Below are positions 32,560 through 64,000 of a DNA stretch of 64,000 nt, piece after piece. The notes below the pieces were generated by a model, which was not told the DNA's origin, ran no database searches, and worked only from the letters and a program-made list of their open reading frames with translations. This DNA is from Podarcis muralis. Its lineage: Eukaryota. The position numbers and the translations under genes are program-made. Position 1 is the stretch's first letter. Each line of letters opens with the position of its first letter. The stretch lies in assembly GCF_964188315.1 (NCBI RefSeq), contig NC_135661.1, positions 43,958,001 to 44,022,000 of the forward strand, given 5' to 3'.

Positions 32560-44675
<12,116 letters not shown>

Positions 44676-47752: not shown

Positions 47753-50700
47753 CTTGAGGCGCTCACACTCAATACGCCGCTCATCCACTTCACTTTTCAA
47801 GCGTTTATTCTCTTGCTGGAGTCTCTCCATTAGCCCATGGAGGTGGCTGTGGAAAGAAGCTGCCTTAACAAAGGCGAACAAACAGCCATGCAGCAAGCTT
47901 TGGACTTTACACATGAGGATAATAGGACAGGGAAAGGAGGAGCGCCTGAATTTTAAAAACACCTCTTGTCCTGCACAATATTTGGAGATGTGGGGTGGAG
48001 GCAGGGGAAGTTGGGACCAGCAGGTGAGCCTACTGCCCACCCCTTGAGGAAGAGCAGAAGTGTGGGAGGCCTGGAGGCACTTACTCCCTCTCGCCCGTCA
48101 GCTGAGCAATTTGCTTGATCTGGTCCCGGATCTTGTCGCCCAACTTCTCGTTCACCTGCCTGCAACGAGACACCAGTTGGGAGGAAGTAACAAGAGGCAA
48201 AGAAAGGTGGTAAACAGTACTGCTAGAGCCCATTCCCACCCACCCACCCCAGGAGGAGAAGGCTGCCACAGCCAGGTGGCACAAACTCACTTCTGCTCCT
48301 TCACCCACTGGCTGACGTTGGCCACCACCAACTCACTCTCATGATGCAGGCGGTAGCTGTCGGCCCGTGCTGTCTCCAGGGAGGTCTGCAGGGATTCCAC
48401 CTGCCAGGGAAGAAGAGGGCAGTCTAGGAAGGCCACCCTGGCATGGTTCCAGAAGTGCAAAGCAACCTCCACTGGCCCCTCCCCGCTATTGCCCCTAAAC
48501 TATTCTGAAAGGGCCAAAGAATGAAGAGCAGAGCCAGATGCAAACAAGACTCCCAAATGGCAACCACAAGGTCTCTGGTGAGCCACAGACTAAGAGCCCT
48601 GCTGCAGCAGGCTTAGAGCTCCATCTGGTGCGGTATTTGGGGGTCCAAACCAGGTGCTGCCAGGAAACCCAAAGGCAGAGGATCAGGTCTAAAACATTTC
48701 CCAGTGCCTGGTATTCAGAGATAGATTGCCTCTGGACAAGGAGGTTCCACAAAGCTATCATGGCCAACATCTATTGGCACATCTCTTTGTCTTGATTGTC
48801 TACTCCCCCATTTAAACCATTCTAATTGGCAGCCGTCGTCACGCCCTGTGGCAGTGAGTGCTATCAACGAGTTCTACGTTGTGTGAAAAGGAACCTTCTT
48901 TGGTCTTCTGCAAATTCATTTGCTTGCCCTTGAATCTCAGTGGGTGGTCTCACTGTGCCACCAGCAAAACTTCAACCTTGGTCAAGTTCCACTTGAGGAC
49001 AGCACCAGACCTTAGAGAGGATGTGGACAAGTGGAAGAGGATGCAAAGGAGAGTATCAGAGATGCTCAAGAACTTGGCAGGGCAACCGGCCCTGAGGAAA
49101 GGCTGGAGAAGAGCAGCAGCAGGTGAAGGGAGGGACAAGACAAAGCTGGAGGAAGCTGAGCAACAAAGAGAAGGAAAGGAGAGAAAGAACGAGATCAGCT
49201 GAGCTCTAACTCTGGAGAGAAGAACAAACCAAGGCTTATAGGGGCCGAAGGGTGGGGAGGGGAGGGAGAGAGTATTTGCTGGGCAACCTCAGTGCATGGG
49301 GTGCAACCAGCTCTGGCTTTGAGGCTAGACAGGCCTGTTGCTTTCACAACTCCCTGAGGCAGCCAGGCCAGCCTGTTGTGACCTTTGTTGTCACCTCAGC
49401 TTGTGAATGTGCCACCCAGAGGCCATGAGGACTCTCTTAGGATGCTTCGCTTAGGGCCTTCTTCCCCAATGACTTGGGATCTGCTTTCCTCTAGGGGCAG
49501 CAGAGGTGGATGGTGCCCCTGGGGAGTCCGGGGGATGAGTCTCCTCCCCAAACTTTACTTACGTCCCGGCTGGAAACCACAAACTTCTGCCGGAGGACGT
49601 TGACTTCGTTCTGCAGCTCTTCTCTCTGCCAAAGCAGCCCCAGGAGAGGACCAAAGGAAAAGCATCAGCCACCTGAGGAGGACTTGGCTGTGTATCCCTC
49701 CACCCGGCAGGGAGCCCCTCGTCACCTCCTCTGTCGCCTGGTGACACTTCTCCTCCAGCGAGGCCAGCTCCACCTTCATCACCACCAGCTCCTCGTCCTT
49801 TTCGGCCAGAGCCCGCTCGGCCGCCCGGTGCTCCTGCTGCCAGTGCTGCACTTGGCTGCCCAGGGCGCTCAGCCGCTCCTCGGAGGCACAGGCCTGTGAA
49901 GACAGAGGAGTTGCCCACTGGGTGAGCTTGGGCTGAGCAAGAAGCCCCCTCCAGCCCTCCCTCCCTGGGCCAGGGATGCTCACCTCCTGCTCCCTCTCCC
50001 TCTGCATGGCCAGCAGCTGCTGCAGCTGCTCTCGGAAGCCGCTCAGTTCTTCCTCCAGATGGTCTGCCCTGTGCTGGGCAAGCTGCAGCTCCGCCTGCAG
50101 GCAGGACACCTCTCGGGTTCTCTGCTCCAGCTGCCAAGAAGGGAGGGTAGAGGTCATCTCCCGGCTGGCTGGCCTCCAGAAGGTGCCCAGGTTTGGCTTG
50201 GCCTTACCTGCTCCACCGCCTCCCTTTGGCTGGCCTGGCAGGACGTGGCCTGCAGCTGGAGGTCCTGGGCAATGTTCTTGGCTGCAGCCAGGGACTGGTT
50301 GCTCTGGCGCTCCTTCTCCTGGGCAGTGTGCAGCTCAGTGTGGAGCTGGGAGAGGGTGGCCTCCTGGCGCAACACCTGTGGAGTGGGGTGGGGGAGGCAA
50401 GCCTGGTCAACCTGCAGGAAGGCAGGTGAGGGCGGGGAAGTGGCAATGGCTGCCCGCACTCACCTCTGCTGTCTCCTGCTGCAGCTGCAACTGGGCGTGT
50501 TCATACTTTCTGCGGAGCACCTCCAGCTCCGTCTTCTGCTGCTTCACCTGCTCACGCAGAACACGGCTCTCTGTCTCCCGCTCTGTGGCGCAGGTGTGCA
50601 GGCTCTGGGCTTTCCACTCTTCCTCCTGCAACTGCAAGGCCAGGGGGCTGTCAGCTCCTGGGAGACTTGGGACACGCCTCCTCCCTGCAGGCCTGCCCAG

Positions 50701-53700
50701 TGGCTCACCCTGCACTGGCTGCTCTGGAGCTGATGCTGCAGCTCCTTGCATTGCTGTGCCAGCTGGCTCTCCTGCTCCTTGGCCCTTCGCAGCTGCCGTT
50801 GCAGCTCCTCCTCCTGGCGCTTCTGCTGGCCCAACTCTGCCTGCAACTCATCCAGCACCGACTGGTTCCCTTGCACCTGCGGGCAGCACATACCAGAAGG
50901 CTTCAGGCTGCCACCAGCTGAGCTCTCCCGCAGGCAGAAGCAATTGGCTTGGCTGGGATGGCAGTTGCCCTTCAGGCCTTCCCACTTTCCCCTTCCCCAC
51001 CTTCAGCTGCAGGCTCTTCAGCCCTTCCCGGCTGCTCTGTAGCTTCTGCTGCAGCCGAGATGCCTCCTTCTGGTGCTGCTGGGACTCTTGCATGGCTGCC
51101 TGGTGCTGCTGCTTTGACTGGCTCAGCTCTCCCATCAGTTGCTCCAACAGCTCTCTGGGGGAGGCAGAATCAGCAGCAAGAATAAAAACTCTGGGTCAAA
51201 GTGGTCCCATCTAGACCAGCCTCCTCTTGCTGACAGCAGGCAGCCCATTATGATGCCTCAAGAGAAGCCCCAAGCAGGGCCTGAGGACAACAGCTCCCTT
51301 CCCACCCCTCTTTGATCCTTCACAACTAGTAGCCACAGAGGGCGCCCTTCCTCTTCTGCAACCCTGTCCCCCCATAGAGACTCATGTCAGGGCCTAGGGA
51401 GACCCCCACCCCCTGCCATTTGCCACTGCAGCTGCTACCTTTTCTGCTCCAGCTCTGCTTCAGCAACGGAGAGCCTTTCATTGAGAACCCGGAGCTCTGC
51501 CTCCAGCCGGCGGCCAGCCTGTGTCTGATGTGTGAGCTCTGTGAGCCGCTCACTCAGCTGCTCCTGGGTGTTGTGCAGGCTGCTCTGGGTCAGCAGCACC
51601 TGCTCCTCCTGCTGCGCCAGCTCCCGGGCTGTGGGGTGGAGGGAGGGTCTGAGATGCTGGCAGGAGCCCCAAAGGGGAGCAGAAGAAACCAGCAGGTGGG
51701 CTGGCTGAAGCATCCCACAAGGCTCTGGGGAGGTGGGAGAGGGGATGGGTCCTCGGCTTGCTTCTCACTCCCACCTTTGCTGCTTTGCTCCAACTGTTGC
51801 CACTGCCCAGTATTCTAGTCTCAATGATACTGACAGGAATTTCTGGCTACGGAGCCTCCAGCCTCCTATGTCCTGGCCCCACTCACCAGTTTTCTGGTGC
51901 TGCTCCTGGCTCTCGTGCAAGCTCCGCCGCAGGGCCTGCACCTCGGCGCACAATGTGGCACACTCCGCTCTGCTGTGCTCCAGCTCCCGCTGGGCCTTCT
52001 GCAGGCTGGCCTCCAGGTGATGGGCACGGGCACGCTGCTGCTCCACTTCCTGCCCCTTCTCCTGCAGGGTGCTGCAGGCGTGCACCATCTCCGCCTGGGA
52101 CTTCCGCAGGATTGTATCTCGCTTCTGGATGGCCTGTGGGAGGGAGGGAGTCAGCCACAGACAAGGACCCACACACCCCAGCAAGCCTCCCAGCAAAGGC
52201 AGGCAGAGGTGCTCACCTGCTCCCTTTGAGCAACCAGCTTGCGGCTTTGCTTGAGCTCCATCTGCAGCTGCTGGACCTGCTGCTGCTGCTTGTCCCTCTC
52301 TGCTGCTGCCTCCTCATACAGGCTTTGCAAGTTCAGCTCCAGGTGAGCCAAGTCTGGGGAAAAAGGTGGCCTCTTGCTCAGCACCGGCCCAGCCCAGCCC
52401 GATGTCTGCTCAGGCCAAGAGTGGGAAGGTCTGGCCTATGTCCTTGCTACTTCCACTGGTTCCTACCGTTCAGAGCGCTGCTCTTCTGCTCAGTGACCCT
52501 CACCAGCTCCATTTTTAAATCCTGCACCAGGCTCTGGTACTCCTCAGCCTGCCGCTGGTGCTTAGAGCTCTCCTCTTCCTCTTTCAGCAGCTTCTGCTCA
52601 GAACAAAGAGAACCACGACTCAGCCTGGAGCCCTACATCTCCAGGGCTCCCCCCAGCACCCCCCAACAAGTGTTGTGGCCCGAGAGCAGGGCCTACCTGC
52701 CTGAGGGTCTCTGCGGCGACTATCTGGCTTTCATAGCTGCCGTTGGAGCAGCTGTGAGTTGCTTTGTAAGAAGCGAAGTCCCTGTGCAACGTGGACAGCG
52801 CCGCCTCTTGGTCTAGGAGCTGAAGAGCACACAGCAGTCAGTCAGAGGTGGCTCCCTCTTCTGCTGCCCGTGGGGTTGGGGGCCGAGGCAAGGCTCACCT
52901 GGACACGGTTGGCAGCCAACTCCTCCTGCAGCGCCTGGATGGTCTCTTCAGAATGGCAGGCGAGCTGCTGGCTCTGGGCCAGCTCCACCTGGGTGTCGCG
53001 CAGCTCCCGCATCAGCTTCTCAGCGGTGTCTTCCGCCCGGCTGGCCTGCCAGCATTTGCCCTTCAGCTCCTCCTGCAGGATCTGCTGCTCTGCTTGCAAC
53101 CTATAGAGGGCCTCGTCCTTTTCCTTGGCCTGCGGCAACAGGGCAAGCACAGCTTAGGGCCAGGTGAGCAGCCAGGCCCCCATGGCCACCGCCTTCCCCT
53201 CTAAACCAGGACCCCTACCTGGCAGGCGGCCTCCTCCTCCAGGCGCTGCAACTGGCACTCCAGCTCCCCGGCTCTGCTCAGCGAGGCCTGGAACTTCTTC
53301 TTGTAGAGCTCCAGGCTGCCCTCCAGGAGGGTGCTGCTGCTCTCCACCTGGCCCAGCTGCTCGTGCAGGTGCCGCTCTCGCTCGCTCTGGCAGGACAGCT
53401 CCCGCTCCTGCTTCTGGGTCACTTCCTCGTAGTAAAGGAGCTGCGGGGGGAAAGGGAGGTAGGCAACTCTGGGTGGGAGGGTAGGAGTGGGGTGTGGGGT
53501 GCAGCCAGCTGGCTGGGCTCACCTGCTCCTTGAGGACCTGGCACTGCTGAAGCAGCATCTCCAGGTCCAGCGTCTGCTTCTCGATCCGGCACTCGCGGGA
53601 CTGCAGCTTGCTGAGGTTCTCCTGGTTGCGCCCCTTGCAGATATCCAGCTCCTGCTGCAGGCGCTGCAGCTTGTCTTGCAGCTGGTCCATGTTGGCCTGG

Positions 53701-55052
53701 TGGTTCTGCTGGGCGGAGAGCTGTTCACCCCGCAGCTGCTCCAGGAGGGCGGCCTTGCTCTGGCTCTGCAAATAGCATGGGGGGGTGTTGTCATGTGAGT
53801 AAGAGGAGGGGTGCCTTGGAGCCTGGTCCCCTCTCTTCCCCATGCAGCAAGGAATGGATCTGGCCCCAAACTGGCTCCTTCCCCCTGCAGTCAGGGGTTC
53901 TGGGTGAGCACCTGGAGGAGAGGCAGCCCACAAGGATGCAAGGAGGCTGCAGACCGTTGAAGGGAAGGGAGTCAAACTTTAGGGGGTGGCAGGAAACTGA
54001 GATCAGCTGGTAGGGAAATGGGGGCCAAACTGAATTTGCAACCACCCCCACCCCCCACCAGAGGGCACGGACCTTGCTGAGGGAGGACTCCTTCTCGTGC
54101 TGGAGCTGGCAGATGAGCCGAGTCTGCTCCACTATTGCCTTCTCCTGCTCAGTGCAAGAGTCTTGCAGGCTCCTCAGCTCATCCTGCAGGTGGTGGAGCT
54201 GCCCCCTGAGGTGGTTCACTTCGGCCTCTTTACCTGCAAGCTGGCAGTGGAGGGGACAGATGAGCATCCTCAGGAGGCTGCCGGGCAATCCACACATTCA
54301 GACCATCTCATCCTGCCCCTTCTCTCCCTCCCCTGGCCTGGCTCTTTTCCTCTGTGCTATGTGAGGCAAAGCCCCCGGACCCTCATCCTTGCACTACTGC
54401 TGCTTGTCAAGATAGATCCTGAGCTGCCGACTTATAGTCAATCCAGCTTCTGGAACAGGTGAGAGCCCAGAGAACTTCACTGTGTGTTGCCCTGCGATTT
54501 GCCTGCTTGTTTCCAAACAACCTGCTGAGGACACACAAGCACCTCCTGTGACCTGCCCTTTGGTGATTGATCCTCTGCGGGGGGACAGTCTGCTGTCCTT
54601 GGGACTCTTCCCCTGCTCGGAGAACACTGGGGAGGGAGGGAGGAGGGCCTGGTTGCTGGTCACCTTGGGAGCTCCACCCTTTGTGGGCTACTTTTTCAAG
54701 ACTGCGGCAAGGAGGCTCTCCATCCCCTAAATGTCACCTCATCCTTCCCTTGCACCCGCTCCTCCTCAGCTGCTTTCAGACATCCCTGAAGTTTCACAAT
54801 CGTCTGGTCACGGAGATCGACCTAGGGGAAGAAGGGCCTGACTAAGAACTGGCAGCTTGGGGGGTGGGGATTCCAGAGACAATGCCTAGAACTTGGAACC
54901 TTCCTTGGGTGCTGCTGCAGCAACCTTCTCCCTCTGGCAGAAAGAGAGCAGGAGGCTGCTGGGCCACGAAGAGTCTCACCTGGGAGTCCTGCAACAGCTA
55001 GCCAGCCTACCTCTCGCTTGGAGGCTTCCTGCTGCTCCACCAGCGCTGCCAT
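47753..55052 (-). CDS. PMFBP1: Polyamine-modulated factor 1-binding protein 1 (sperm head-tail coupling coiled-coil protein), intact core
   Basis: In-frame GT-AG exons: (55178)55052-55011, 54821-54738, 54240-54073, 53765-53523, 53440-53219, 53129-52899, 52819-52697, 52593-52467, 52353-52217, 52133-51887, 51628-51439, 51154-51001, 50876-50709, 50631-50464, 50375-50208, 50130-49984, 49893-49726, 49625-49563, 48400-48291, 48159-48085, 47846-47753. Recalled human matches: LEGSLELYKKKFQASLSRAGELECQ, LHRDFASYKATH, EEYQSLVQDLKMEL..VTEQK, NEKLGDKIRDQIKQIAQLTGER. Syntenic position tail-to-tail with DHX38. The start codon (55052) and the terminal exon (possibly 47595-47464) are uncertain. Confidence 0.85.
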
Positions 55053-55384
55053 GCTCTGGGCCAGTTGTTGGTGCTCTGCGTGGGCGTCAGACAGCTGCTT
55101 CTGGCATCGGGAGAGCTCGTCCTGTGCTGCTTGGAAGTCAGCCTCCTTCTGCTCCGCCCGCTCTTCGCTCTGCTGCAGCTGCATCCAAGGCCAGGCAAAG
55201 CACCACGTGAGAGGATGTGGAGGGAAGGAGGCCGCAGAGAGGCACACCAGGGGGAGGTCCCGCCACACACAGAAGTCCCAGTTTAGAGGTGGAAGAAACT
55301 GGGGCAAGCTGGGCTGGGATTTGGAACAGAGTCTCTCTGGGCTTGGAGTGAGAGAGGAGCAGGAGGAGGAAGAGGAAGGCTCAC

Positions 55385-57808
55385 CTGAGTCTGGCAGGTG
55401 GAAAGCTGCTCTTGCAAGGAGGCCAGCTGCTCCTTGGTCCTCTGGGCCTGGCAAGAAAGAGAGAGAAGGGCTGAGCAGAGGCCTCAACCCCTGAGCACTT
55501 GGCAGGGACGTTGCAGCTTCAATTGCCCAGCCGTCTCCCTCCAGTGTGCCTCTTGCTCACGCACAACCTTCTGCAGGGCACTTAGCTCCTGGTCTGTCTG
55601 TCTGCAGCTCCTCCTGGAGGATGTGGGACACGCGCTGCTATTTGCTCAGCAGCTCCTTCTGCTGCCCCACCTGGTTCCAGGAAAAAAGGGCCAGGCCAAA
55701 AAAACATCTTTAGCTCCTGAGTGGGTGGGTTTCTCTGGCCCCTCCCAATTCACACTGGGCTGTACCTCACTCTGCAGCATCCTCAGCTGGTGACGTGCCA
55801 AGGACTCTTTCTGCTGAAGGTCCTGAATCTCCTCCTCCCTGCTGCGGACTCTGGACTCGGAGGCAGCCTGGGAAGCCCGAGAGGCTGCCAAGTTTTCCTG
55901 CAGCTGGTGGATAATGTCCTTGTACTGCTGCACCTGCCATGGCAACAGCGTTTTAAACAAGGTAAACACAGAAGAACCCTGCAAAGAGGCTTTGCTGCTC
56001 GGTTAACCCCAGAATTTCCCCTCCTCCAAAAAGTAGCAGTGGCAAAGGTTTTGAGACCTGCTGTTCCCGCCCCCCACCCCATATCAGTTTTTAGATGAAG
56101 GTTTTGGAGGGTATTTGGGAATTACTGAGCCTTTTTTTTTGTTTTTGTTTAACAGGCATTGCTTTTCTTGATTTCCTGGCTTTAAAATTATTTAATGGGT
56201 TATTATTGTTTGCTAATAAGGTCAGAAAGGTCCTGCTGGATCAGCCCCACTATAAAGCTACCTTATACAGTGGTACCTCAGGTTACAAACTTAATTCGTT
56301 CCAGAGGTCCGTTCTTAACCCGAAACCGTTCTTAACCTGAGGTGCACTTTGGCTAATGGGGCCTCCCGCGTTGCGATTTCCGTTCTCATCCTGGGGCAAA
56401 GTTTGCAACCCAAGGTAACTACTTCCAGGTTAGTGAAGTTTGTAACCCGAAGTGTTTGTAACCCGAAGCATTTGTAACCCGAGGTACCACTGTAATGAGT
56501 AAGGTCAATGGTCCATCTAGCTCAAGATTGACACAGACTGGCAGCAACCAGTAGGAAATCTCTCCCGGCTCCACCTAGTGATGCCACCAGGAATTGAACC
56601 TGTGTCACCCGAGCATACAAAAGCATATGGCCTAGCCCAGCCCCATCTGGTCCTCAGTGGCCAACCAGATGCCCCCAAAGGGAAGCCCACAAGCAGGGCG
56701 AAAATACAATAGCTTCGCTCCTCACTTGTGATTCTCAGCAATTGGGATCCAGAAGCATTTACTGATTCTGAGGCCAGAATTCAGCCATCTTTGTCCTTCC
56801 TAGAGTGTGTATCTGGAGACAACAGTTTCCCTCGGGATCTTTCCCTTCCACCAGGTTTTGGTTTTGCCCACAATATCTATGCTCCCCTCTAAGACAAAGA
56901 GCTCCAACTTATCCATCTTGTCTCAGAGGCTTCTAGCATTATATCGTTATCACTGGGAGCCTCTGGGAGGAACCCAGGGATGGAAGCATTTAAAAGAAAA
57001 CAAAAGAGCCCAAATGCCCAGAGACTGCAGGGAAGAGAAGGGCACGTGGTCCTCTTGGGACAAACCTCCTTCCCTCAAGCACCTTGGACTAGGGCCAGGA
57101 GAGGGACACATGGTACCTGCTGCTCTGCTGCTTGGCTATCAGCTGCTGCTCTTGCCAGCTTCGCCATTTGCTGCTTTTGCTGCCAGATATGGAAGACAAA
57201 TTGGGCACCTGCAGCTCTTTTGTGGCAGCCATGGCCTGAAAGCGAGCATCTAGCTCAGGGGATCCTCAGGCAGGCCAGCCAGCCATGAGGGTTTTCAGAC
57301 AGGAAAAGCAAGGTGTGAATGCCAGAAGCCATCAGTGGGCTCCCAGGAGGTCTTTCCAAGCCTTTCGTCCTGCTCACTTGGCTCTCTGCTCTCTCTAGCA
57401 CTAGGCCTGCCTCCTCCACTAGGGCTTGCTACATTTCCAACTCTTGCACAGCCTGCCTGCGTTCATATGCCTGGGGGCAAGGAGCGTAGGCTTGGGTAAG
57501 GCCCCCAGCATGGCTCTGTGGGGTGGGATGGCAGCTCACAGGGGGTGACAATAAAACAAGCTCTGTGGCTCCCACTGCCTCCCACTCTACCAGGTTTCTG
57601 CCTGCCCCCAAGTCCTTCATTCTGGGGGGGGGGGCTGTCCAGCTGGTCCAGCACTCTATACCTGCTCTCTGGTTCCCTGCAGGTCCTCCTGCTGCTCCTG
57701 GACTTGGATCTCCAGCTGGCAGATGAGGCCTTCCTGTTCGGTCATTTGCTGCTGCAGGGCGCTGTGGGTCTCCTGGAGTCTGTGCAGTGCCTCGCTCTGC
57801 TCCGCAGC
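55385..57808 (-). pseudogene. PMFBP1: Decayed upstream coiled-coil exons of PMFBP1
   Basis: Exon-like blocks with AG/GT ends: 57808-57662 (open), 57470-57378 (in-frame TAG at 57431-57429), 57235-57117 (119 nt, breaks phase), 55933-55766 (open), 55670-55499 (TAG at 55640-55638 plus 4-nt insertion), 55447-55385 (open). All are Q/E/L-rich like the core. Confidence 0.75.
56268..56492. mobile_element. Tc1/mariner (Tigger-like) MITE
   Basis: TA|CAGTGGTACCTCAGGTTACAAAC ... TTTGTAACCCGAGGTACCACTG|TA with internal TTTGTAACCCGAAG repeats. Same family as 9343-9557. Confidence 0.9.
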
Positions 57809-60407
57809 CTGGAAGGGAACACAATGGCATGAGGGCCTCCTCCCACTCCCTCTGGGTCTTTGGCAGGGCTATGAGCTCCCTGCCTCAGCCATGAACCTGA
57901 CTACTTCACTGGGCAAACCTGGCACCCTTCCAGGTCAATGCAGGACTGCCTCTTCAAACAGAAATTGGACTCAGATGTGGAGGGGGTAGAGGAGAAAGGG
58001 GCCCTTTCAGAACGCCCTCTGCAGGGAAGCTTGCCTGGGGCCACATCTGATGTCTTTCTGGTGCCAAGCAGAGACCTTTTTAAAAAAATTAGCCCAGCAC
58101 ACCATCAGGCTGGTCTCAGCCTAGCATTTAAAAAAATGATGTTATTGTTTCTGTTCTGAAGAGCCACCTCCTCACTCATGATGTGCTGACTGCGTATCTC
58201 AGTGCAATATTCAGATGAAGGTCAGTGAGAGGCAACCCCACTGGAAAGAAGCACAGACCTCTCGATGGGGATGCTTCCTCGCCTTAATTGGGAGCATCAA
58301 TGAGGAAGCAGGGAAGGTACTCCCAGCCCACGCAGCCCACAGTCACTCTTGCATTCACACACATGCCTCTTGGGAGCAGTTCTCATGACCTACAGGTAGA
58401 GGAGGCTTGGGTCAGCCATGAACTCCTGGGCAAAATGAATACAGTCATTCTGGAGGGAAGGGCGAGGAGGCTATAGGGGCCGAGAAGGCAAGGATGATGG
58501 CAACCTCCTGGACAAAGGCCAGAAATGCAGATGGAGGCACCCACTTTCCACGGTCGGAGGACCACCTGTCCTGGCAGGAGCCTCTTGGTCTGCCAGGGAA
58601 GTGTCCAAAACAGATGCAATCCAAAGAGCCTTTAGATGAAATGGACCTGTTGTGGCTCTTGGAAGCACTAACCTTCTTTGCCAGATGCAAGACAGGCCAA
58701 CGGCTTTCCACCGGGGCCCTCCCTGCCACTCCAGAAGAAGAGGAGGAAGCTGCCTTGGCTCCCCTTTTGTGGCCCTCCTGCTCTCTCTGCTCAGCCACCA
58801 AAGAAGAAGTTGTCGGCAGTGAGGTTTTAATCCCTTCCTCCTTGCCAGCTGCAGGCCCAGCGGAGGATCAATAGTGTTTAGACAGCCAAGGAGATCCCTT
58901 TCCCTCCTAAAGCACCCGATCAATAGCAGCCTTTCCCCTCCTTTTCCCCTCCCTCCACGCACGAAAGAACAAGCGTCAAATAACTGGCGCCTTTGGGCTG
59001 ATTGGGATGCCCAAAGGCAAGGAGTGGTTGCTGGCCATATGCGCCCACTGGGAATCACAGCGCAAGTCCTGGCTGCTTCAGACCCAGCAGGTCCAACGTG
59101 ACATGAGGTCTCATTTCTGGGCCAGATCCTGAATCCAGAGTGCTCCCGAGAGCTGCAGGAGTTACTTCATCCTCTGGGCTTTTCCGAACTGCAGCACGTG
59201 GGATGGGTAGCTAAGCCTCCTCAGGAAGAGGCAGAACAACATCCTCCTCATCACGTCCTTCCACAAGGAGGGCTCCAAGCCCCAGGCATCTTCTCCCCTG
59301 GTTCTCATGCTTTGTATGGGCGGACCAGTCCAAGGTAAAGGACAGGCAATGTTGTGTGAGGCTGGTGGGTCACCTGGGAGCACTGCCACTGCACCTTGTG
59401 GAGAAGGATGCTGAAAGCAGGAGGCACCTGGAGGAGCCTGCAGCGCCAAGCGAGAGGCACGTCCCACCCACCCCCCTTGCTGTGGAGCGACTCAGGCAAC
59501 GGCAAGAAGCCACCAAGGAAATCCCGCCTCCCTTTAATTGCTGCCTTCATGTTATTCTTTTCAAGGCTGTGTTAATTGAAATTAAACAGCTGCCACGTTC
59601 TGGCTGGGACAAAAGCTGTCTCTGCTCTGCTCCTTCGTGATTTAATGAAGACTGACACGCGGTGAGAAAACAACAACGGCTCACATCTTCCCAGATGCCA
59701 ACAAAGCGAGGGGGGGAACAGGGGGCTGCCCCTCCCCACCCCAAAGAACCGCATCCCTCGGTTGGAACCGCACCCCCAGGGCACAGACCACATTACCTCT
59801 GAGTTCTGGGCAGCTCTTAACACACCACCAGCCTTAAGGAAAGATGTGGGAGTATCAGGTGGCAACTGCCAGGTGCCCTGTGCTTGCCATGCCAGGCACA
59901 GACCTGTGAACTACATCCTCAGGTGTGCTGCTGCTGGCTTGTGCCATCGCTCCCTGGTGTGTCCTCTTGGGAGGATGGAGCCTGTGTGGTTCACTCATTG
60001 CCTGACCTTGAGTGCTCTTCACATCCCCAGTCAACCCCAAGCTGGGCCTCTTCTTTTCTACCAGAAGGGGTTCCCCTGTTGGCACTTAGCCAGCATCTTG
60101 GCAAGTGGGGTGGTGTCTAACCTAGGCAAGAGGGAGTCCCCTGACTTGGCCTTGGTCTGAGAGGTTGCTGCTGCTCTGTTTGGTCTGGGCAGTCCCACCC
60201 AGAGTTGTTGGCTCAGTGGGCCCTGCTTGGAACCACAGAGGCACAGGGAGCACTTTCACATCTGCCATGGACATCTGTTGCTTCTGGGCCAAAGCACACA
60301 AGGAAGGCCTTCAAGGGCCTGCTCACAGGATCACAACTTGCTGAAGGGTGAGGAAAGTGTACTGCTGTCTGCTTGGGGATTTCACCATTGTGTGGAAAGA
60401 GATAGAT

Positions 60408-60732
60408 CAGGGGTCAGCAACCTAAGGCCCATGGGCCACAAGCGGCCCATGGGGATCATTTAACCAGCCCACGGACCCCTGCCGCCCGCTCGGTCGGCTC
60501 CCATGCACTGTGCTAAACTGGTGTGGAGCAGAGTGGGGACTGCCTTCCGCGACGCTGGCCAGCTTCCCATTGGCTGCAGGAAGCTCCTGCAGCCAATGGG
60601 AAGCTGCGCACGCCTCCTCCGCACCGGAAGGAGCGCCAGAAATAGTGTTTGCATGTGCGTGAACACTCTGGCCCACTGCGGCATCTGCGGGACTGTGAAC
60701 CGGCCCAAGCCACAAAACTTTGCCAACCCCTG
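60408..60732. mobile_element. hAT-type MITE with central 21-bp hairpin
   Basis: TIRs CAGGGGTCAGCAA / TTGCCAACCCCTG. 8-bp TSD AGATAGAT (60400-60407) / AGACAGAT (60733-60740). Perfect hairpin at 60560-60606. Confidence 0.85.
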
Positions 60733-61139
60733 AGACAGATGAAGAGAGAAGCCCAGGACAAGGGTGTGGGGCACCTAGCTGGCTGGTTAGATGGTGGGCT
60801 GATCCCACCCAGGACCTTGTGTGCTTCCCGTGTCAGAGGCTGTATGAAGCCTCTGAATAACACTTACAGGGGAATCCAGGCAGGCAGAATGCTGTTGCCC
60901 TCAGGTGTACATCCCTCACAGGGCCTCTGGCTGGCCAATATTAAGAACAGAAGGCCTCCATTGGTCTGATCCAGCAGCCAGGCTCCTCTTAAACCTGAGT
61001 CTCAACAACAGACTTGGATCGTGAGCCTTTGCTACTCCTCGCGTCTTCAAAAATGGGAAGGAGAACCCCCTTCCTCCCCTCTCCTCCACAAATGGGCCTG
61101 GCAGGCACAGCACTGTTCAGCACAGCAAAATATGCAAAA

Positions 61140-61460
61140 TGACGTATGAGCACAGACCTCATTAACACCCGCCTCCAACATCATTAAGATGTTTCCAAGA
61201 AAATTAATTGAGAGACTCATTAAAAATAAATTAAGAAAAATGTGTTGCAGAGCGCTTGCTCTGAGCTCGTAAATCACAGCTCGAAGCTCCGGGCTGCTGT
61301 GCAGACAATTAACGCCGGCCAATTTGTTTTACCCTGACTGCGAAAATTAGAAAGCAGACGTGGAGATTAGATTAGGGGTGTCTGTCGAGCGGAACTCAGA
61401 GTGCATATTTTAGGATACAAAATGGAAATTAGGAAAACAACAAAGGCCGGCCAGATTTTA
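61140..61460. promoter_or_regulatory. Candidate conserved non-coding enhancer element
   Basis: Unique non-repetitive block dense in TAAT/ATTA cores, with CTCGTAAA (61266-61273) overlapping a minus-strand TGATTTAC. Lies on the presumed ZFHX3 side of PMFBP1. Conservation not tested. Confidence 0.35.
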
Positions 61461-64000
61461 GTCCATCCGAGGGGCTGATGGGCAGAGATGGGGAAGGACA
61501 GCAAGAGTCAGGCTTGGCTGGTGGAGAGCAGCCCCCCCCCCGCAAGATGGTAGCTATCAGGGGCCGATTTGTGCAGAGATACCAGCTGCCCACCACACAG
61601 CATGGAGGGAAGGGGGTTCCCAGCCCTTTGGGCTGTAAGACATGTTCCAATTCCCCCAGCAACATGAACAGAAAGAGTCTCTGTCCTGCACTCAGGCCCC
61701 TCCCAGCTCTCCAGAAAGTCAGTTACTGGAAGATCTGTAAAACAAGTCTCAGAGATCTCCAACCCCAAAGACTGCTTGATGCAGGAAGCAGGAGACCAGC
61801 CCTGGTACAGCAACTCCCACGCAGTCTAGAGAAGCACATGATCCTCTGGGCACCCCATGGGCCTTGGAACAGCACACCATGAAGTTGTTGGCTGACTTGG
61901 TACGCAAGTCAGAGAAGAAGGAAGGGGAGCAACTTGTCCTTAAGCTCAATCCTACACTCTGGCCCTTGGTCATAGCCCTTGCACAGGCTGGAAGAGGCAT
62001 TTTCCTGCCCGTCTCAGGACTGCAGCCTGACCTGAGGCTTTCAGAGGCTCTTGCAAAGTTTAAAGAATCCAGGAAGCATCAGCACAAGGAGGAGCAAGCT
62101 GCCTGTGCCAGGGAGAGGCTTGACCGAGTGCCAAGGAAGAGAGAATGGCCCTCTCACCCACCCCAACCCTGGATTGGCAGCAACCCCCAAGTACCCAAAG
62201 CAAGAAGAGAGAAGAGTGGATGTTGAAGTCATTTCTGTACTTCAAAAGTCAGGCAGCTGCCAGAGAGGCAGGCAGAGTGTTAGAGGAGGACAATGCAAAA
62301 GGAAGGAAATGGCAGAAGGTTCTCCACTGAAGGAGCATTTGAAGAGGTGACATTAAACTCAAAAAGGAATTAGAACAAATTATCTAATTAAGCATACACT
62401 TCGCAACAGAGCACTGGGGTCAGGTGGCATCAGCCCAAAAGGTGAATGGGACTGGAAGACAGCCAAACACAGCACCCATTTTTCTTTTTTTAACAAAAGA
62501 AAACTGAGGAGGAATCCAGAAAGTCCAAGGCAAACATCTACACAACAGAATTAAGCCAGATGAGATTTCATCCTGTGGTGAAAGTCTTGCTCCATCATAA
62601 TGCGCCAAGAGAAGAGGTGGACGGGAGAAATGAGCAGGTAGCATTTCCTAAGGAAAGGAGTCAGCTGTGTCATTTCAGAGAAGCCCTGAGCTCAGATCTC
62701 AGTGCCTTCCTGCCTTACACTGTGGACCACCATGGCTGGCCCAGAGCGCTGGCAGCTTAGCACTGAAGGGCCAAAGAACTGCTGTTTATTACTAAATCCA
62801 ATACTAAGGGGTGCTTGATACTCAGGCCACTGGGGGCGGGGGGTGGAAAGAATGCAGTAAGATTAGCAAGAAGTTTAAGGGGCTGTGAGCACAACCACAA
62901 CCACACACCTATAATCCCTCATTGCCTCTGGTACTCTTTGCTCGCTTCTGGCTGGTGTCTGGAAAACATTTTCAGGGCCCAGCTACAGTGGTGGAGGGTG
63001 GCAGGCAGCCCTGTGGAGCAAAAAATCTTCCTAGCAAGGGCCCCTGTTTGATGCACCCCTGGTGCATAAAAGCATAAGCAATGGGAACCTGTGCGTAGCT
63101 GCCTCCATTTTGGCTGCAGTTAGTAATTAATACAACTCTTGCCTGTCCTTTCCTGCACATTGGCAATGCTGGGGGTGGGAGGATTGGAGTTCCTGAAAAG
63201 GACAGCAGGGGTCTCCCTCAGCCTTTGCAAGCTCTGCCTCTGCTGTTCCCCCACACCCCACCGCATCCACTGCATAATTTCAAAATGGCAGCTTTTTGAA
63301 AATTCACCTTGATTGCCAGACATGAGAAGTGACTCATCCCGCAGTGACTGTCTGGCAGAGGGATGGGATCAGACAGCAGACAATGAGGGACGGGACGCAT
63401 TAACAGTGTCTATTACAGAGCTCTCAAAAATACCTTTGTTCTGTCAAAGATCCCATCATTTGCTAGTTGTGTTCCTCTGAAAGCAGGGAATTAAACACAC
63501 ACACACAGATTCTGACACACACACCCTCCCAGGGATGCTGTGGGGAGAGGGGGAAAGAGGCAATGGTGCCCCATATCTGTGGATTCTCAAAAGCCAGAAA
63601 GAAAAGACGGCAAGTTGCTCCCTGTAAATTCAGCAGCTGACAGGCACAGAATAAAAGGCAGCCATCCGCAGCTCCATTCCCACCTAGAGCAGAGTTTCCT
63701 CACCAGAGGCAGAAGACAAAACAGGGCTCATCCTCTCAGCCATTGGACCTCCTGGTAGAAGCCCAGCACTTGCCTGTCCCATTGCCCTCCCTCCTTCCCA
63801 GGGTTGGGGAGCTTCAAGGAAACCTTGACTGGGGAAGCAGTCAAAACTCACACTTGGCACCTCTGTTTTTGCAGGAAACGGCAGGCAGTTCCAAATGCAG
63901 GCATGTACACACCTCTGCCATGCCACACTGGCTGCAAGTGCATGCCTTGAGCAGTCACAGCGACACACCCCCTGGCTGGTGCTCAAAGACAGGAGGAGGG

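What the first reader, a model, noticed from the sequence alone, without database searches (positions are those of the whole stretch)
55385..57808. A gene losing its N-terminus: six upstream PMFBP1 exons with intact splice sites but nonsense and frameshift lesions
Seen: exon 57470-57378 reads AYERRQAVQELEM*QALVEEAGLVLERAESQ (TAG where CAG is expected). Exon 57235-57117 is 119 nt between phase-0 neighbours. Exon 55670-55499 reads VGQQKELLSK*QRVSHILQEELQ, then a 4-nt AGAC duplication shifts the frame before QELSALQKVVREQEAHW. Three interleaved exons remain open. Inference: more than 250 codons of ancestral coiled coil are being pseudogenised while the ~1,040-codon core stays intact. The dead exons may persist as a uORF-laden 5' UTR or be skipped. 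PMFBP1 loss causes acephalic sperm in mammals, so a length change may affect sperm neck structure.
Basis: partly seen in the sequence, partly recalled or inferred. Interest (0 to 1): 0.7.

Follow-up and report, generated by a model that had tools for sequence, protein, structure and literature searches.

The report
Two dead exons in lizard PMFBP1
In the wall lizard's sperm head-tail coupling gene PMFBP1, two old coding exons carry real stop and frameshift mutations, but the assembled RNA skips them and stays in frame, so the gene has lost two small coiled-coil modules, not its N-terminus.

Summary
The gene on the minus strand is PMFBP1. This rests on collinear matches to annotated squamate and turtle PMFBP1 and on the same helicase neighbour as in Pogona.

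**Lesions**
- Two of the three reported lesions are real: a TAG in exon B (57431-57429), and a TAG (55640-55638) plus an extra AGAC unit (55603-55592) in exon E.
- The exon E lesions are unchanged in a DNA run and in three RNA-type runs from other studies. The exon B stop is unchanged in one RNA-type contig and probably in the DNA run.
- The third lesion, the "119-nt exon C", comes from a mis-set acceptor. RNA contigs start this exon at 57188, giving 72 nt in frame.

**Transcripts**
- Spliced contigs join A to C' to D, or A directly to D, then D to F (skipping E), then F-G-H-I.
- All used exons are phase 0 and multiples of three. Together they give 290 open codons (1 of 20,000 shuffles does as well).
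- One contig carries 780 more bases upstream of exon A, which lie outside the stretch laid.

**Verdict**
Pogona has deleted exons B-F and keeps a stop-bearing relic of G, so exon loss in this region recurs among squamates. The finding is ordinary and modestly interesting. The scan had not noted it on other DNA.

The parts
57662..57808 (-). Exon A of the PMFBP1 N-terminal extension: 147 nt, 49 codons, open, phase 0-0, used in mRNA
   Evidence: Translation. 51-53% identity to Pogona and Sceloporus PMFBP1. Joints from 57662 to 57188 and to 55933. X17 contig 13 continues 780 nt upstream of 57808-57810.
57378..57470 (-). Exon B: dead exon, 31 codons, in-frame TAG at 57431-57429, skipped in all spliced contigs
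   Evidence: Translation. Weak but collinear match to the turtle segment between the exon A and exon C homologues, with the stop aligned to Glu/Lys. Stop unchanged in X15 colinear contig 5 and probably in X2 contig 29. The A-to-C' and A-to-D joints bypass it.
57117..57188 (-). Exon C': the exon actually used, 72 nt, 24 codons, open; present in X15 and X19 contigs, skipped in X17
   Evidence: Joints 57188 to 57662 and 55933 to 57117. Translation. Its 3' part matches turtle PMFBP1 residues just before the exon D homologue. The acceptor dinucleotide in the reference reads AT.
57189..57235 (-).
   Evidence: The joint places the exon start at 57188. The 119-nt version is out of frame.
55766..55933 (-). 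Exon D: 168 nt, 56 codons, open, used
   Evidence: Translation. 42-46% identity to turtle, Sceloporus and Hemicordylus PMFBP1, E 3e-10. Joints to C', to A and to F.
55499..55670 (-). Exon E: dead exon, 172 nt, TAG at 55640-55638 and a frameshift from an extra AGAC unit at 55603-55592; skipped by the D-to-F junction
   Evidence: Translation. The two frames match adjacent parts of Sceloporus PMFBP1. Lesions unchanged in X2, X15, X17 and X19. D-to-F joint 55766 to 55447 in X15 and X17. Exon E is seen only in contigs colinear with its flanking introns.
55385..55447 (-). Exon F: 63 nt, 21 codons, open, used
   Evidence: Translation. 71% identity to Hemicordylus. D-to-F joint, and the F-to-G junction inside X19 contig 18.
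55011..55178 (-). Exon G: 168 nt, 56 codons, open, used
   Evidence: Translation. 53% identity to Sceloporus. G-to-H joint in all three RNA runs. Its Pogona counterpart is a stop-bearing relic.
54738..54821 (-). Exon H: 84 nt, 28 codons, open, used
   Evidence: Translation. 57-72% identity to Hemicordylus and turtles. Joints on both sides in three RNA runs.
54073..54240 (-). Exon I: 168 nt, 56 codons; first exon shared with mammalian PMFBP1; the Met of the MVEQTR motif is Ile here
   Evidence: Translation. 46-60% identity to reptile orthologues, and Macaca residues 8-57 align here. H-to-I joint in three RNA runs. X17 and X19 contigs of 1369 and 1564 nt run on into the core.
47753..53765 (-). 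Core PMFBP1 exons (J onward), collinear with orthologues and free of stops in the aligned pieces
   Evidence: tblastn of Hemicordylus and Eublepharis PMFBP1. blastn of transcript L001. Exon 52133-51888 found the orthologues.

Best explanation
[quoted passage not shown] In reptiles it carries an N-terminal extension built from short, symmetric phase-0 exons, each a multiple of three bases.

In this lizard two of those exons are dead. Exon B has a nonsense mutation. Exon E has a nonsense mutation plus a 4-base tandem-repeat slip. Exon C now starts 12 bases inside the ancestral exon.

Because every exon in the series is phase 0-0, leaving an exon out does not disturb the frame. The mRNA found in RNA assemblies joins A-(C')-D-F-G-H-I and runs on into the core, so the protein keeps its N-terminal extension minus two modules (about 87 codons).

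Shown: the lesions, their presence in several individuals, the splice junctions, and the open frame. Inferred: that the upstream 780 nt is coding, that inclusion isoforms are rare or removed by nonsense-mediated decay, and that the shortened rod is functional.
For: Gene identity: exon 52133-51888 retrieves annotated PMFBP1 of Hemicordylus, Anolis, Pogona, Eublepharis and turtles. The core is collinear and stop-free. The 3' end of the neighbouring helicase at 43532-44669 matches the gene next to Pogona PMFBP1.

Exons A, C', D, E, F, G, H and I align collinearly to N-terminal parts of reptile orthologues; exon B does so only weakly, to the turtles.

Lesions: the exon E lesions are present in the reference, in X2 (DNA) and in colinear contigs of X15, X17 and X19; the exon B stop is present in the reference and X15, and probably in X2.

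Junctions with GT..AG ends, absent from the DNA run:
- A to D (X17)
- C' to D (X15, X19)
- D to F, skipping E (X15, X17)
- G to H and H to I (all three runs)
- F to G (inside X19 contig 18)
- A to C' (X15, X19), whose acceptor reads AT rather than AG in the reference

X17 contig 13 has 780 nt upstream of A.

The used exons are 147, 72, 168, 63, 168, 84 and 168 nt, all open. That is 290 codons with 0 stops, against 7 and 11 stops in the other two frames, and 1 of 20,000 shuffles is as open.

In Pogona the N-terminal exons upstream of A spread over about 40 kb. This explains why none lies in the 6.2 kb of window upstream of A.
Against: All RNA evidence is from assembled contigs, which show presence, not proportions. 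Five joints and many loose ends were not listed, so minor B- or E-including isoforms are not excluded.

The 780 nt upstream of exon A could not be read, so an open frame back to a start codon is not shown.

X19 contig 18 runs colinearly from exon F through the 51-nt intron and dead exon E to 55705. That could be a transcript with an internal start.

The C' acceptor reads AT in the reference, which is non-canonical.

The orthology of exon B rests on a weak alignment (about 110 of 1000 shuffles score as well), supported only by its collinear position.

No lacertid PMFBP1 protein appeared in the protein search. This could mean that annotators treat the gene as broken.
Confidence: 0.75

Rival explanations
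1. N-terminal truncation in progress. The upstream exons are effectively 5' UTR, and the protein starts at an internal Met, for example in exon G. This could arise through transcripts that begin near dead exon E.
For: X19 contig 18 is spliced H-G-F but colinear through the E-F intron and exon E up to 55705.

Other lineages do have short forms. Mammalian PMFBP1 starts at the exon I homologue. Gecko models start at MVEQTR. Transcript L001 of another squamate carries stop-laden N-terminal exon homologues ahead of a 1077-aa ORF.
Against: Junction contigs in three runs link A, C', D and F in frame to G-I. The 290 codons are open, far beyond chance. The Met of MVEQTR, used as the start in short gecko models, is Ile here. 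A contig end is not a transcription start.
Confidence: 0.13
2. B and E are regulated 'poison' cassette exons. They are included in part of the transcripts to trigger nonsense-mediated decay and tune PMFBP1 dosage, and so are kept for that purpose.
For: Both exons keep good-looking acceptors and GT donors. Colinear low-depth contigs cover them.
Against: No listed junction uses their splice sites. The lesions sit in formerly coding sequence that is intact in Sceloporus and turtles. Pogona simply deleted the same exons, which argues for loss rather than regulatory retention.
Confidence: 0.07
3. The lesions are assembly or sequencing errors, or the exons belong to a separate gene or a duplicated fragment.
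For: None found. The (AGAC)3 tract is the type of sequence where indel errors occur.
Against: The exon E stop and the four extra bases appear in contigs of four other runs from four studies, and the exon B stop in one of them and probably a second. Splice junctions tie exons A, C', D and F to G-I of PMFBP1. The exon order is collinear with orthologues.
Confidence: 0.02

Closest known systems
Annotated squamate and turtle PMFBP1 (Sceloporus 1468 aa, Anolis 1405 aa, Pogona 1425 aa, Hemicordylus 1324-1352 aa, Mauremys 1769 aa)
   Same: Same gene: collinear core, same helicase neighbour, and the same N-terminal extension of short coiled-coil exons.
   Different: Each species' model uses a different subset of exons A-H. 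The wall lizard has stop or frameshift lesions in B and E, whereas Sceloporus keeps E intact.
Pogona vitticeps PMFBP1 locus (L002)
   Same: Exon loss in the very same region, with the frame kept by joining phase-0 exons (A directly to H).
   Different: Pogona has deleted B-F outright and keeps a stop-bearing relic of G. The wall lizard still uses D, F and G, and keeps B and E as recognisable dead exons.
Mammalian PMFBP1 (about 1010-1025 aa; mouse 1023 aa, whose residues 1-282 and 750-1023 bind CENTLEIN, PMC8363609)
   Same: Homologous core from exon I onward. Presumed role in sperm head-tail coupling (from the literature, not tested here).
   Different: Mammals lack the whole N-terminal extension. 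The wall lizard keeps most of it in its mRNA.
Exon death (pseudo-exons) in modular genes with symmetric phase-0 exons, a general and well-known mode of gene evolution
   Same: Inactivating mutations in an exon whose omission keeps the frame, with the mature mRNA skipping it.
   Different: Nothing unusual. Only the non-canonical AT at the C' acceptor is odd.

Membership tests
PMFBP1 orthologue | Collinear sequence similarity to annotated PMFBP1 along the coiled-coil core | tested here: met
   Exon 52133-51888 hits PMFBP1 of six squamates at E 5e-19 to 3e-8. tblastn pieces are collinear from 54243 to 47753 without stops.
PMFBP1 orthologue | Conserved gene neighbourhood (convergent DEAH-box helicase downstream) | tested here: met
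   The Pogona locus has a DEAD/HA2 helicase gene after PMFBP1. Its last exons match window 43532-44669 on the + strand at 97-100%.
PMFBP1 orthologue | [quoted passage not shown] | not testable with these tools
   Tissue of the RNA runs is not on record. The function is known only from mammals (PMC8363609).
N-terminally truncated gene (5' exons turned into UTR) | No in-frame spliced path from the upstream exons into the core | tested here: not met
   Joints A-C'-D-F-G-H-I and A-D-F. All used exons are open and multiples of three.
N-terminally truncated gene (5' exons turned into UTR) | Sequence upstream of exon A is non-coding or absent from transcripts | tested here: inconclusive
   X17 contig 13 carries 780 nt upstream of exon A, but its letters could not be read. 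No upstream exon lies within the window.
Dead exon (pseudo-exon) within a live gene | Homology to a coding exon of orthologues, disabling lesion fixed in the population, exon left out of mature mRNA | tested here: met
   Exon E: homology, lesions in five genomes and a D-to-F junction. Exon B: weaker homology; stop unchanged in the reference and X15 and probably in X2; bypassed by the A-C' and A-D junctions.
Poison (NMD-triggering) cassette exon | Regulated inclusion through its own splice sites | tested here: inconclusive
   No listed joint uses the splice sites of B or E, but five joints were not shown and contigs drop rare forms.

The most novel reading that the evidence does not exclude
The N-terminal extension of PMFBP1 is being dismantled exon by exon, independently in different amniote lineages. 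The wall lizard has lost B and E. Pogona has lost B-F and G. Another squamate (transcript L001) and geckos have apparently lost the whole reading frame upstream of exon H or I. Mammals lack the extension altogether. The wall lizard would then be an intermediate stage, perhaps already making a short isoform from transcripts that begin near dead exon E. The length of this rod might track differences in sperm-neck architecture.
Probability: 0.3. Interest if true: 0.5.

Novelty: new member of a known kind. Interest (0 to 1): 0.3.

Why it matters
The finding corrects a tempting misreading. Stops in exon-like sequence of a live gene do not mean the gene end is dying when the exons are symmetric and can be skipped. 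For annotation, a correct wall-lizard PMFBP1 model must leave out B and E and use the short exon C'. No lacertid PMFBP1 protein turned up in the protein search, which may mean annotators treat the locus as broken.

Biologically, this is a small documented case of modular shortening of a sperm structural coiled coil. Together with Pogona and the short gecko and mammalian forms, it suggests that the N-terminal rod of PMFBP1 is evolutionarily expendable, piece by piece.

Tried and rejected
- **Upstream exons in the window.** Sensitive tblastn with N-terminal parts of nine orthologues, blastn with the 5' end of L001, and a motif scan for the conserved RSKY exon found nothing convincing in 57809-64000. 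In Pogona these exons spread over 40 kb, so they lie beyond the window.
- **Genomic loci of other species.** Look-ups for Hemicordylus X7, the old Pogona model and Sceloporus X2 were not on record. Only Pogona X1 gave DNA.
- **Wall-lizard ORFs from assembled transcripts.** A profile of the N-terminal extension that included exon A gave no lizard fragment, only turtle, gharial and bird proteins. The open frame over exon E gave no candidate at all. The lesions therefore could not be dated in other lacertids.
- **Assembly error:** rejected.
- **Separate gene:** rejected, because junctions link the exons to the core.
- **Exon C frameshift:** rejected as a mis-set acceptor.
- **Joined spliced protein model.** This was deliberately not built or searched. 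All searches and translations were exon by exon, by reference.

Full report
**What is in the sequence**

- Exon A (57808-57662), exon D (55933-55766) and exon F (55447-55385) are open.
- Exon B (57470-57378) has TAG at 57431-57429.
- Exon E (55670-55499, 172 nt) has TAG at 55640-55638 and three tandem AGAC units at 55603-55592.
- Downstream follow further open phase-0 exons: G (55178-55011), H (54821-54738), I (54240-54073), then J onward.

**Gene identity**

A core exon (52133-51888) searched against 1.8 billion representative proteins returned 19 hits at E 0.001 or better; the best-scoring full-length ones carry the source name polyamine-modulated factor 1-binding protein 1. They come from Hemicordylus, Anolis, Eublepharis, Pogona, Paroedura and Phrynosoma, with a turtle hit near the threshold. 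These proteins align collinearly to the window from 54243 down to 47753 without stops.

The gene next to PMFBP1 in Pogona is a DEAD/HA2 helicase on the other strand. Its last exons match window 43532-44669 on the + strand at 97-100%.

**Are the upstream exons ancestral coding exons?**

Most of them clearly are.
- Exon A aligns to Pogona, Sceloporus, Anolis and a turtle at 44-53% identity, at the place that follows the conserved RSKY motif.
- Exon D aligns to turtles, Sceloporus and Hemicordylus (E 3e-10). F aligns to Hemicordylus (71%), G to Sceloporus and turtles, H to Hemicordylus and turtles, and I to all of them.
- Exon E: the part before the AGAC tract matches Sceloporus with a score reached by 0 of 1000 shuffles. 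The part after the tract matches the directly following Sceloporus residues in the other frame. This is what a 4-base insertion predicts. The stop aligns with Glu.
- Exon B aligns only weakly to turtles (about 110 of 1000 shuffles do as well). It does so at the collinear place between the exon A and exon C homologues, with the stop opposite Glu/Lys. I treat its orthology as probable, not proven.

**Exon C**

The frame at its 3' end, which matches turtle PMFBP1 just before the exon D homologue, is the frame of a 72-nt exon C' (57188-57117). That is where the RNA junctions put the exon start. Turtles have 28 codons there and the lizard 24, so the acceptor has moved 12 bases inward. There is no frameshift in the used exon.

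**Are the lesions real?**

One run set was laid on 54000-59900.
- The DNA run X2 comes from a different study than the best holder. It covers exon E in one 6172-base contig with three base differences, all listed, none at the stop, and no gaps.
- Colinear contigs of X15, X17 and X19 also cover exon E with the stop and the AGAC tract unchanged.
- X15 covers the exon B stop unchanged. X2 spans it with no gaps, but one of its eleven base differences is unlisted.

So the exon E lesions are present in at least five genomes from four or more studies, and the exon B stop in at least two, probably three.

**What the RNA does**

X15, X17 and X19 were only guessed to be RNA. They carry junctions with GT..AG ends that the DNA run lacks, so they are RNA. 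The junctions are:
- A (57662) to C' (57188), in X15 and X19
- C' (57117) to D (55933), in X15 and X19
- A (57662) to D (55933), in X17
- D (55766) to F (55447), in X15 and X17, skipping exon E
- F to G, inside X19 contig 18
- G to H and H to I, in all three runs

X17 contig 13 (1125 nt) has 780 nt upstream of exon A that do not lie on 54000-59900. X17 and X19 contigs of 1369 and 1564 nt run from exon I on into the core.

Exons B and E appear only in contigs colinear with their flanking introns. No listed junction uses their splice sites. Five joints were not listed, and contigs drop rare forms, so minor inclusion isoforms are not excluded. Following the tool's warning, I draw nothing from contig depths.

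**Reading frame**

The used exons measure 147, 72, 168, 63, 168, 84 and 168 nt, all phase 0-0 and open. That is 290 codons without a stop, against 7 and 11 stops in the other two frames. Only 1 of 20,000 shuffles leaves all seven open.

Any of these exons can be dropped without disturbing the frame, and that is what has happened to B and E. I did not build or search a joined spliced protein; all work was exon by exon.

**Where the true N-terminus is**

In Pogona the eight exons upstream of exon A spread over about 40 kb. The window has only 6.2 kb upstream of A and holds no recognisable upstream exon. The start codon is therefore outside the window. Whether the 780 upstream nucleotides are open could not be read; this is the main gap in the argument.

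**Comparative context**

Every squamate model uses a different subset of exons A-H.
- In the Pogona locus, exon A (48574-48723) is followed after 483 bases by a relic of exon G with an in-frame stop (49207-49374), then H and I. Exons B-F are gone.
- A transcript of another squamate (L001) carries homologues of a far-N-terminal exon and of exon A in different frames with stops. Its 1077-aa ORF starts shortly before the MVEQTR motif.
- Gecko models start at that motif, and the macaque protein starts at the exon I homologue.
- In mouse, the CENTLEIN-binding parts are residues 1-282 and 750-1023 of the 1023-aa protein (PMC8363609). These lie in the core, not in the reptile extension.
- In the wall lizard the Met of MVEQTR is Ile. 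That fits continued use of upstream exons.

**Verdict**

The transcripts skip the broken exons and keep a long in-frame N-terminal part, so this is loss of two coiled-coil modules (about 87 codons), not loss of the N-terminus. It is a new example of a well-known process.

**Open points**
- The AT dinucleotide at the C' acceptor in the reference and X2. It is either non-canonical splicing or a polymorphic acceptor; X17 skips C altogether.
- X19 contig 18, which runs colinearly through the 51-nt E-F intron and exon E to 55705. It is either a retained intron or an internal start.

Noticed in passing
window 57188-57190 (minus strand): The acceptor of the used exon C' reads AT, not AG, in the reference and in DNA run X2. 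Even so, RNA contigs of two runs splice exactly there, and a third run skips the exon. It may be a polymorphic splice site or a rare GT..AT intron.
   Followed up: partly
window 56265-56495: An interspersed repeat in the C-D intron with tandem 'gggttacaaa'-like motifs. Contig depth is 10^3 to 10^5 in all four runs, with many chimeric joints.
   Followed up: no
L002:48574-50506 (Pogona vitticeps PMFBP1): Pogona has no exons B-F between exon A and a relic of exon G that carries an in-frame stop. Its model joins A directly to H.
   Followed up: partly
L001:1-700 (Logan transcript, run SRR12656980, unidentified squamate): The transcript has homologues of a far-N-terminal PMFBP1 exon and of exon A in different frames with stops. 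Its 1077-aa ORF begins just before MVEQTR. This looks like a true N-terminal truncation in another lineage.
   Followed up: partly
proteins P0086, P0088-P0093: Gharial and several birds have short annotated proteins (113-312 aa, 'uncharacterized' or 'Hook homolog 2-like') that match the profile of the PMFBP1 N-terminal extension. In archosaurs the extension may survive, or be annotated, apart from the core.
   Followed up: no
window 43532-44669 (+ strand): The last exons of a DEAH-box helicase, 97-100% identical in protein to the gene next to Pogona PMFBP1. The synteny is conserved, convergent with PMFBP1.
   Followed up: yes
window 54150-55866: Base differences between individuals inside exons. 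Three are in exon D in X15 (55826, 55845, 55866; two at second codon positions). Also 55642 (Lys to Thr, next to the exon E stop, in X15 and X2) and 55634 (Arg to Cys, in X17).
   Followed up: no
protein search: No lacertid PMFBP1 protein appeared among 66 hits, although many other squamates did. Annotation pipelines may treat the lacertid locus as a pseudogene or omit it.
   Followed up: no
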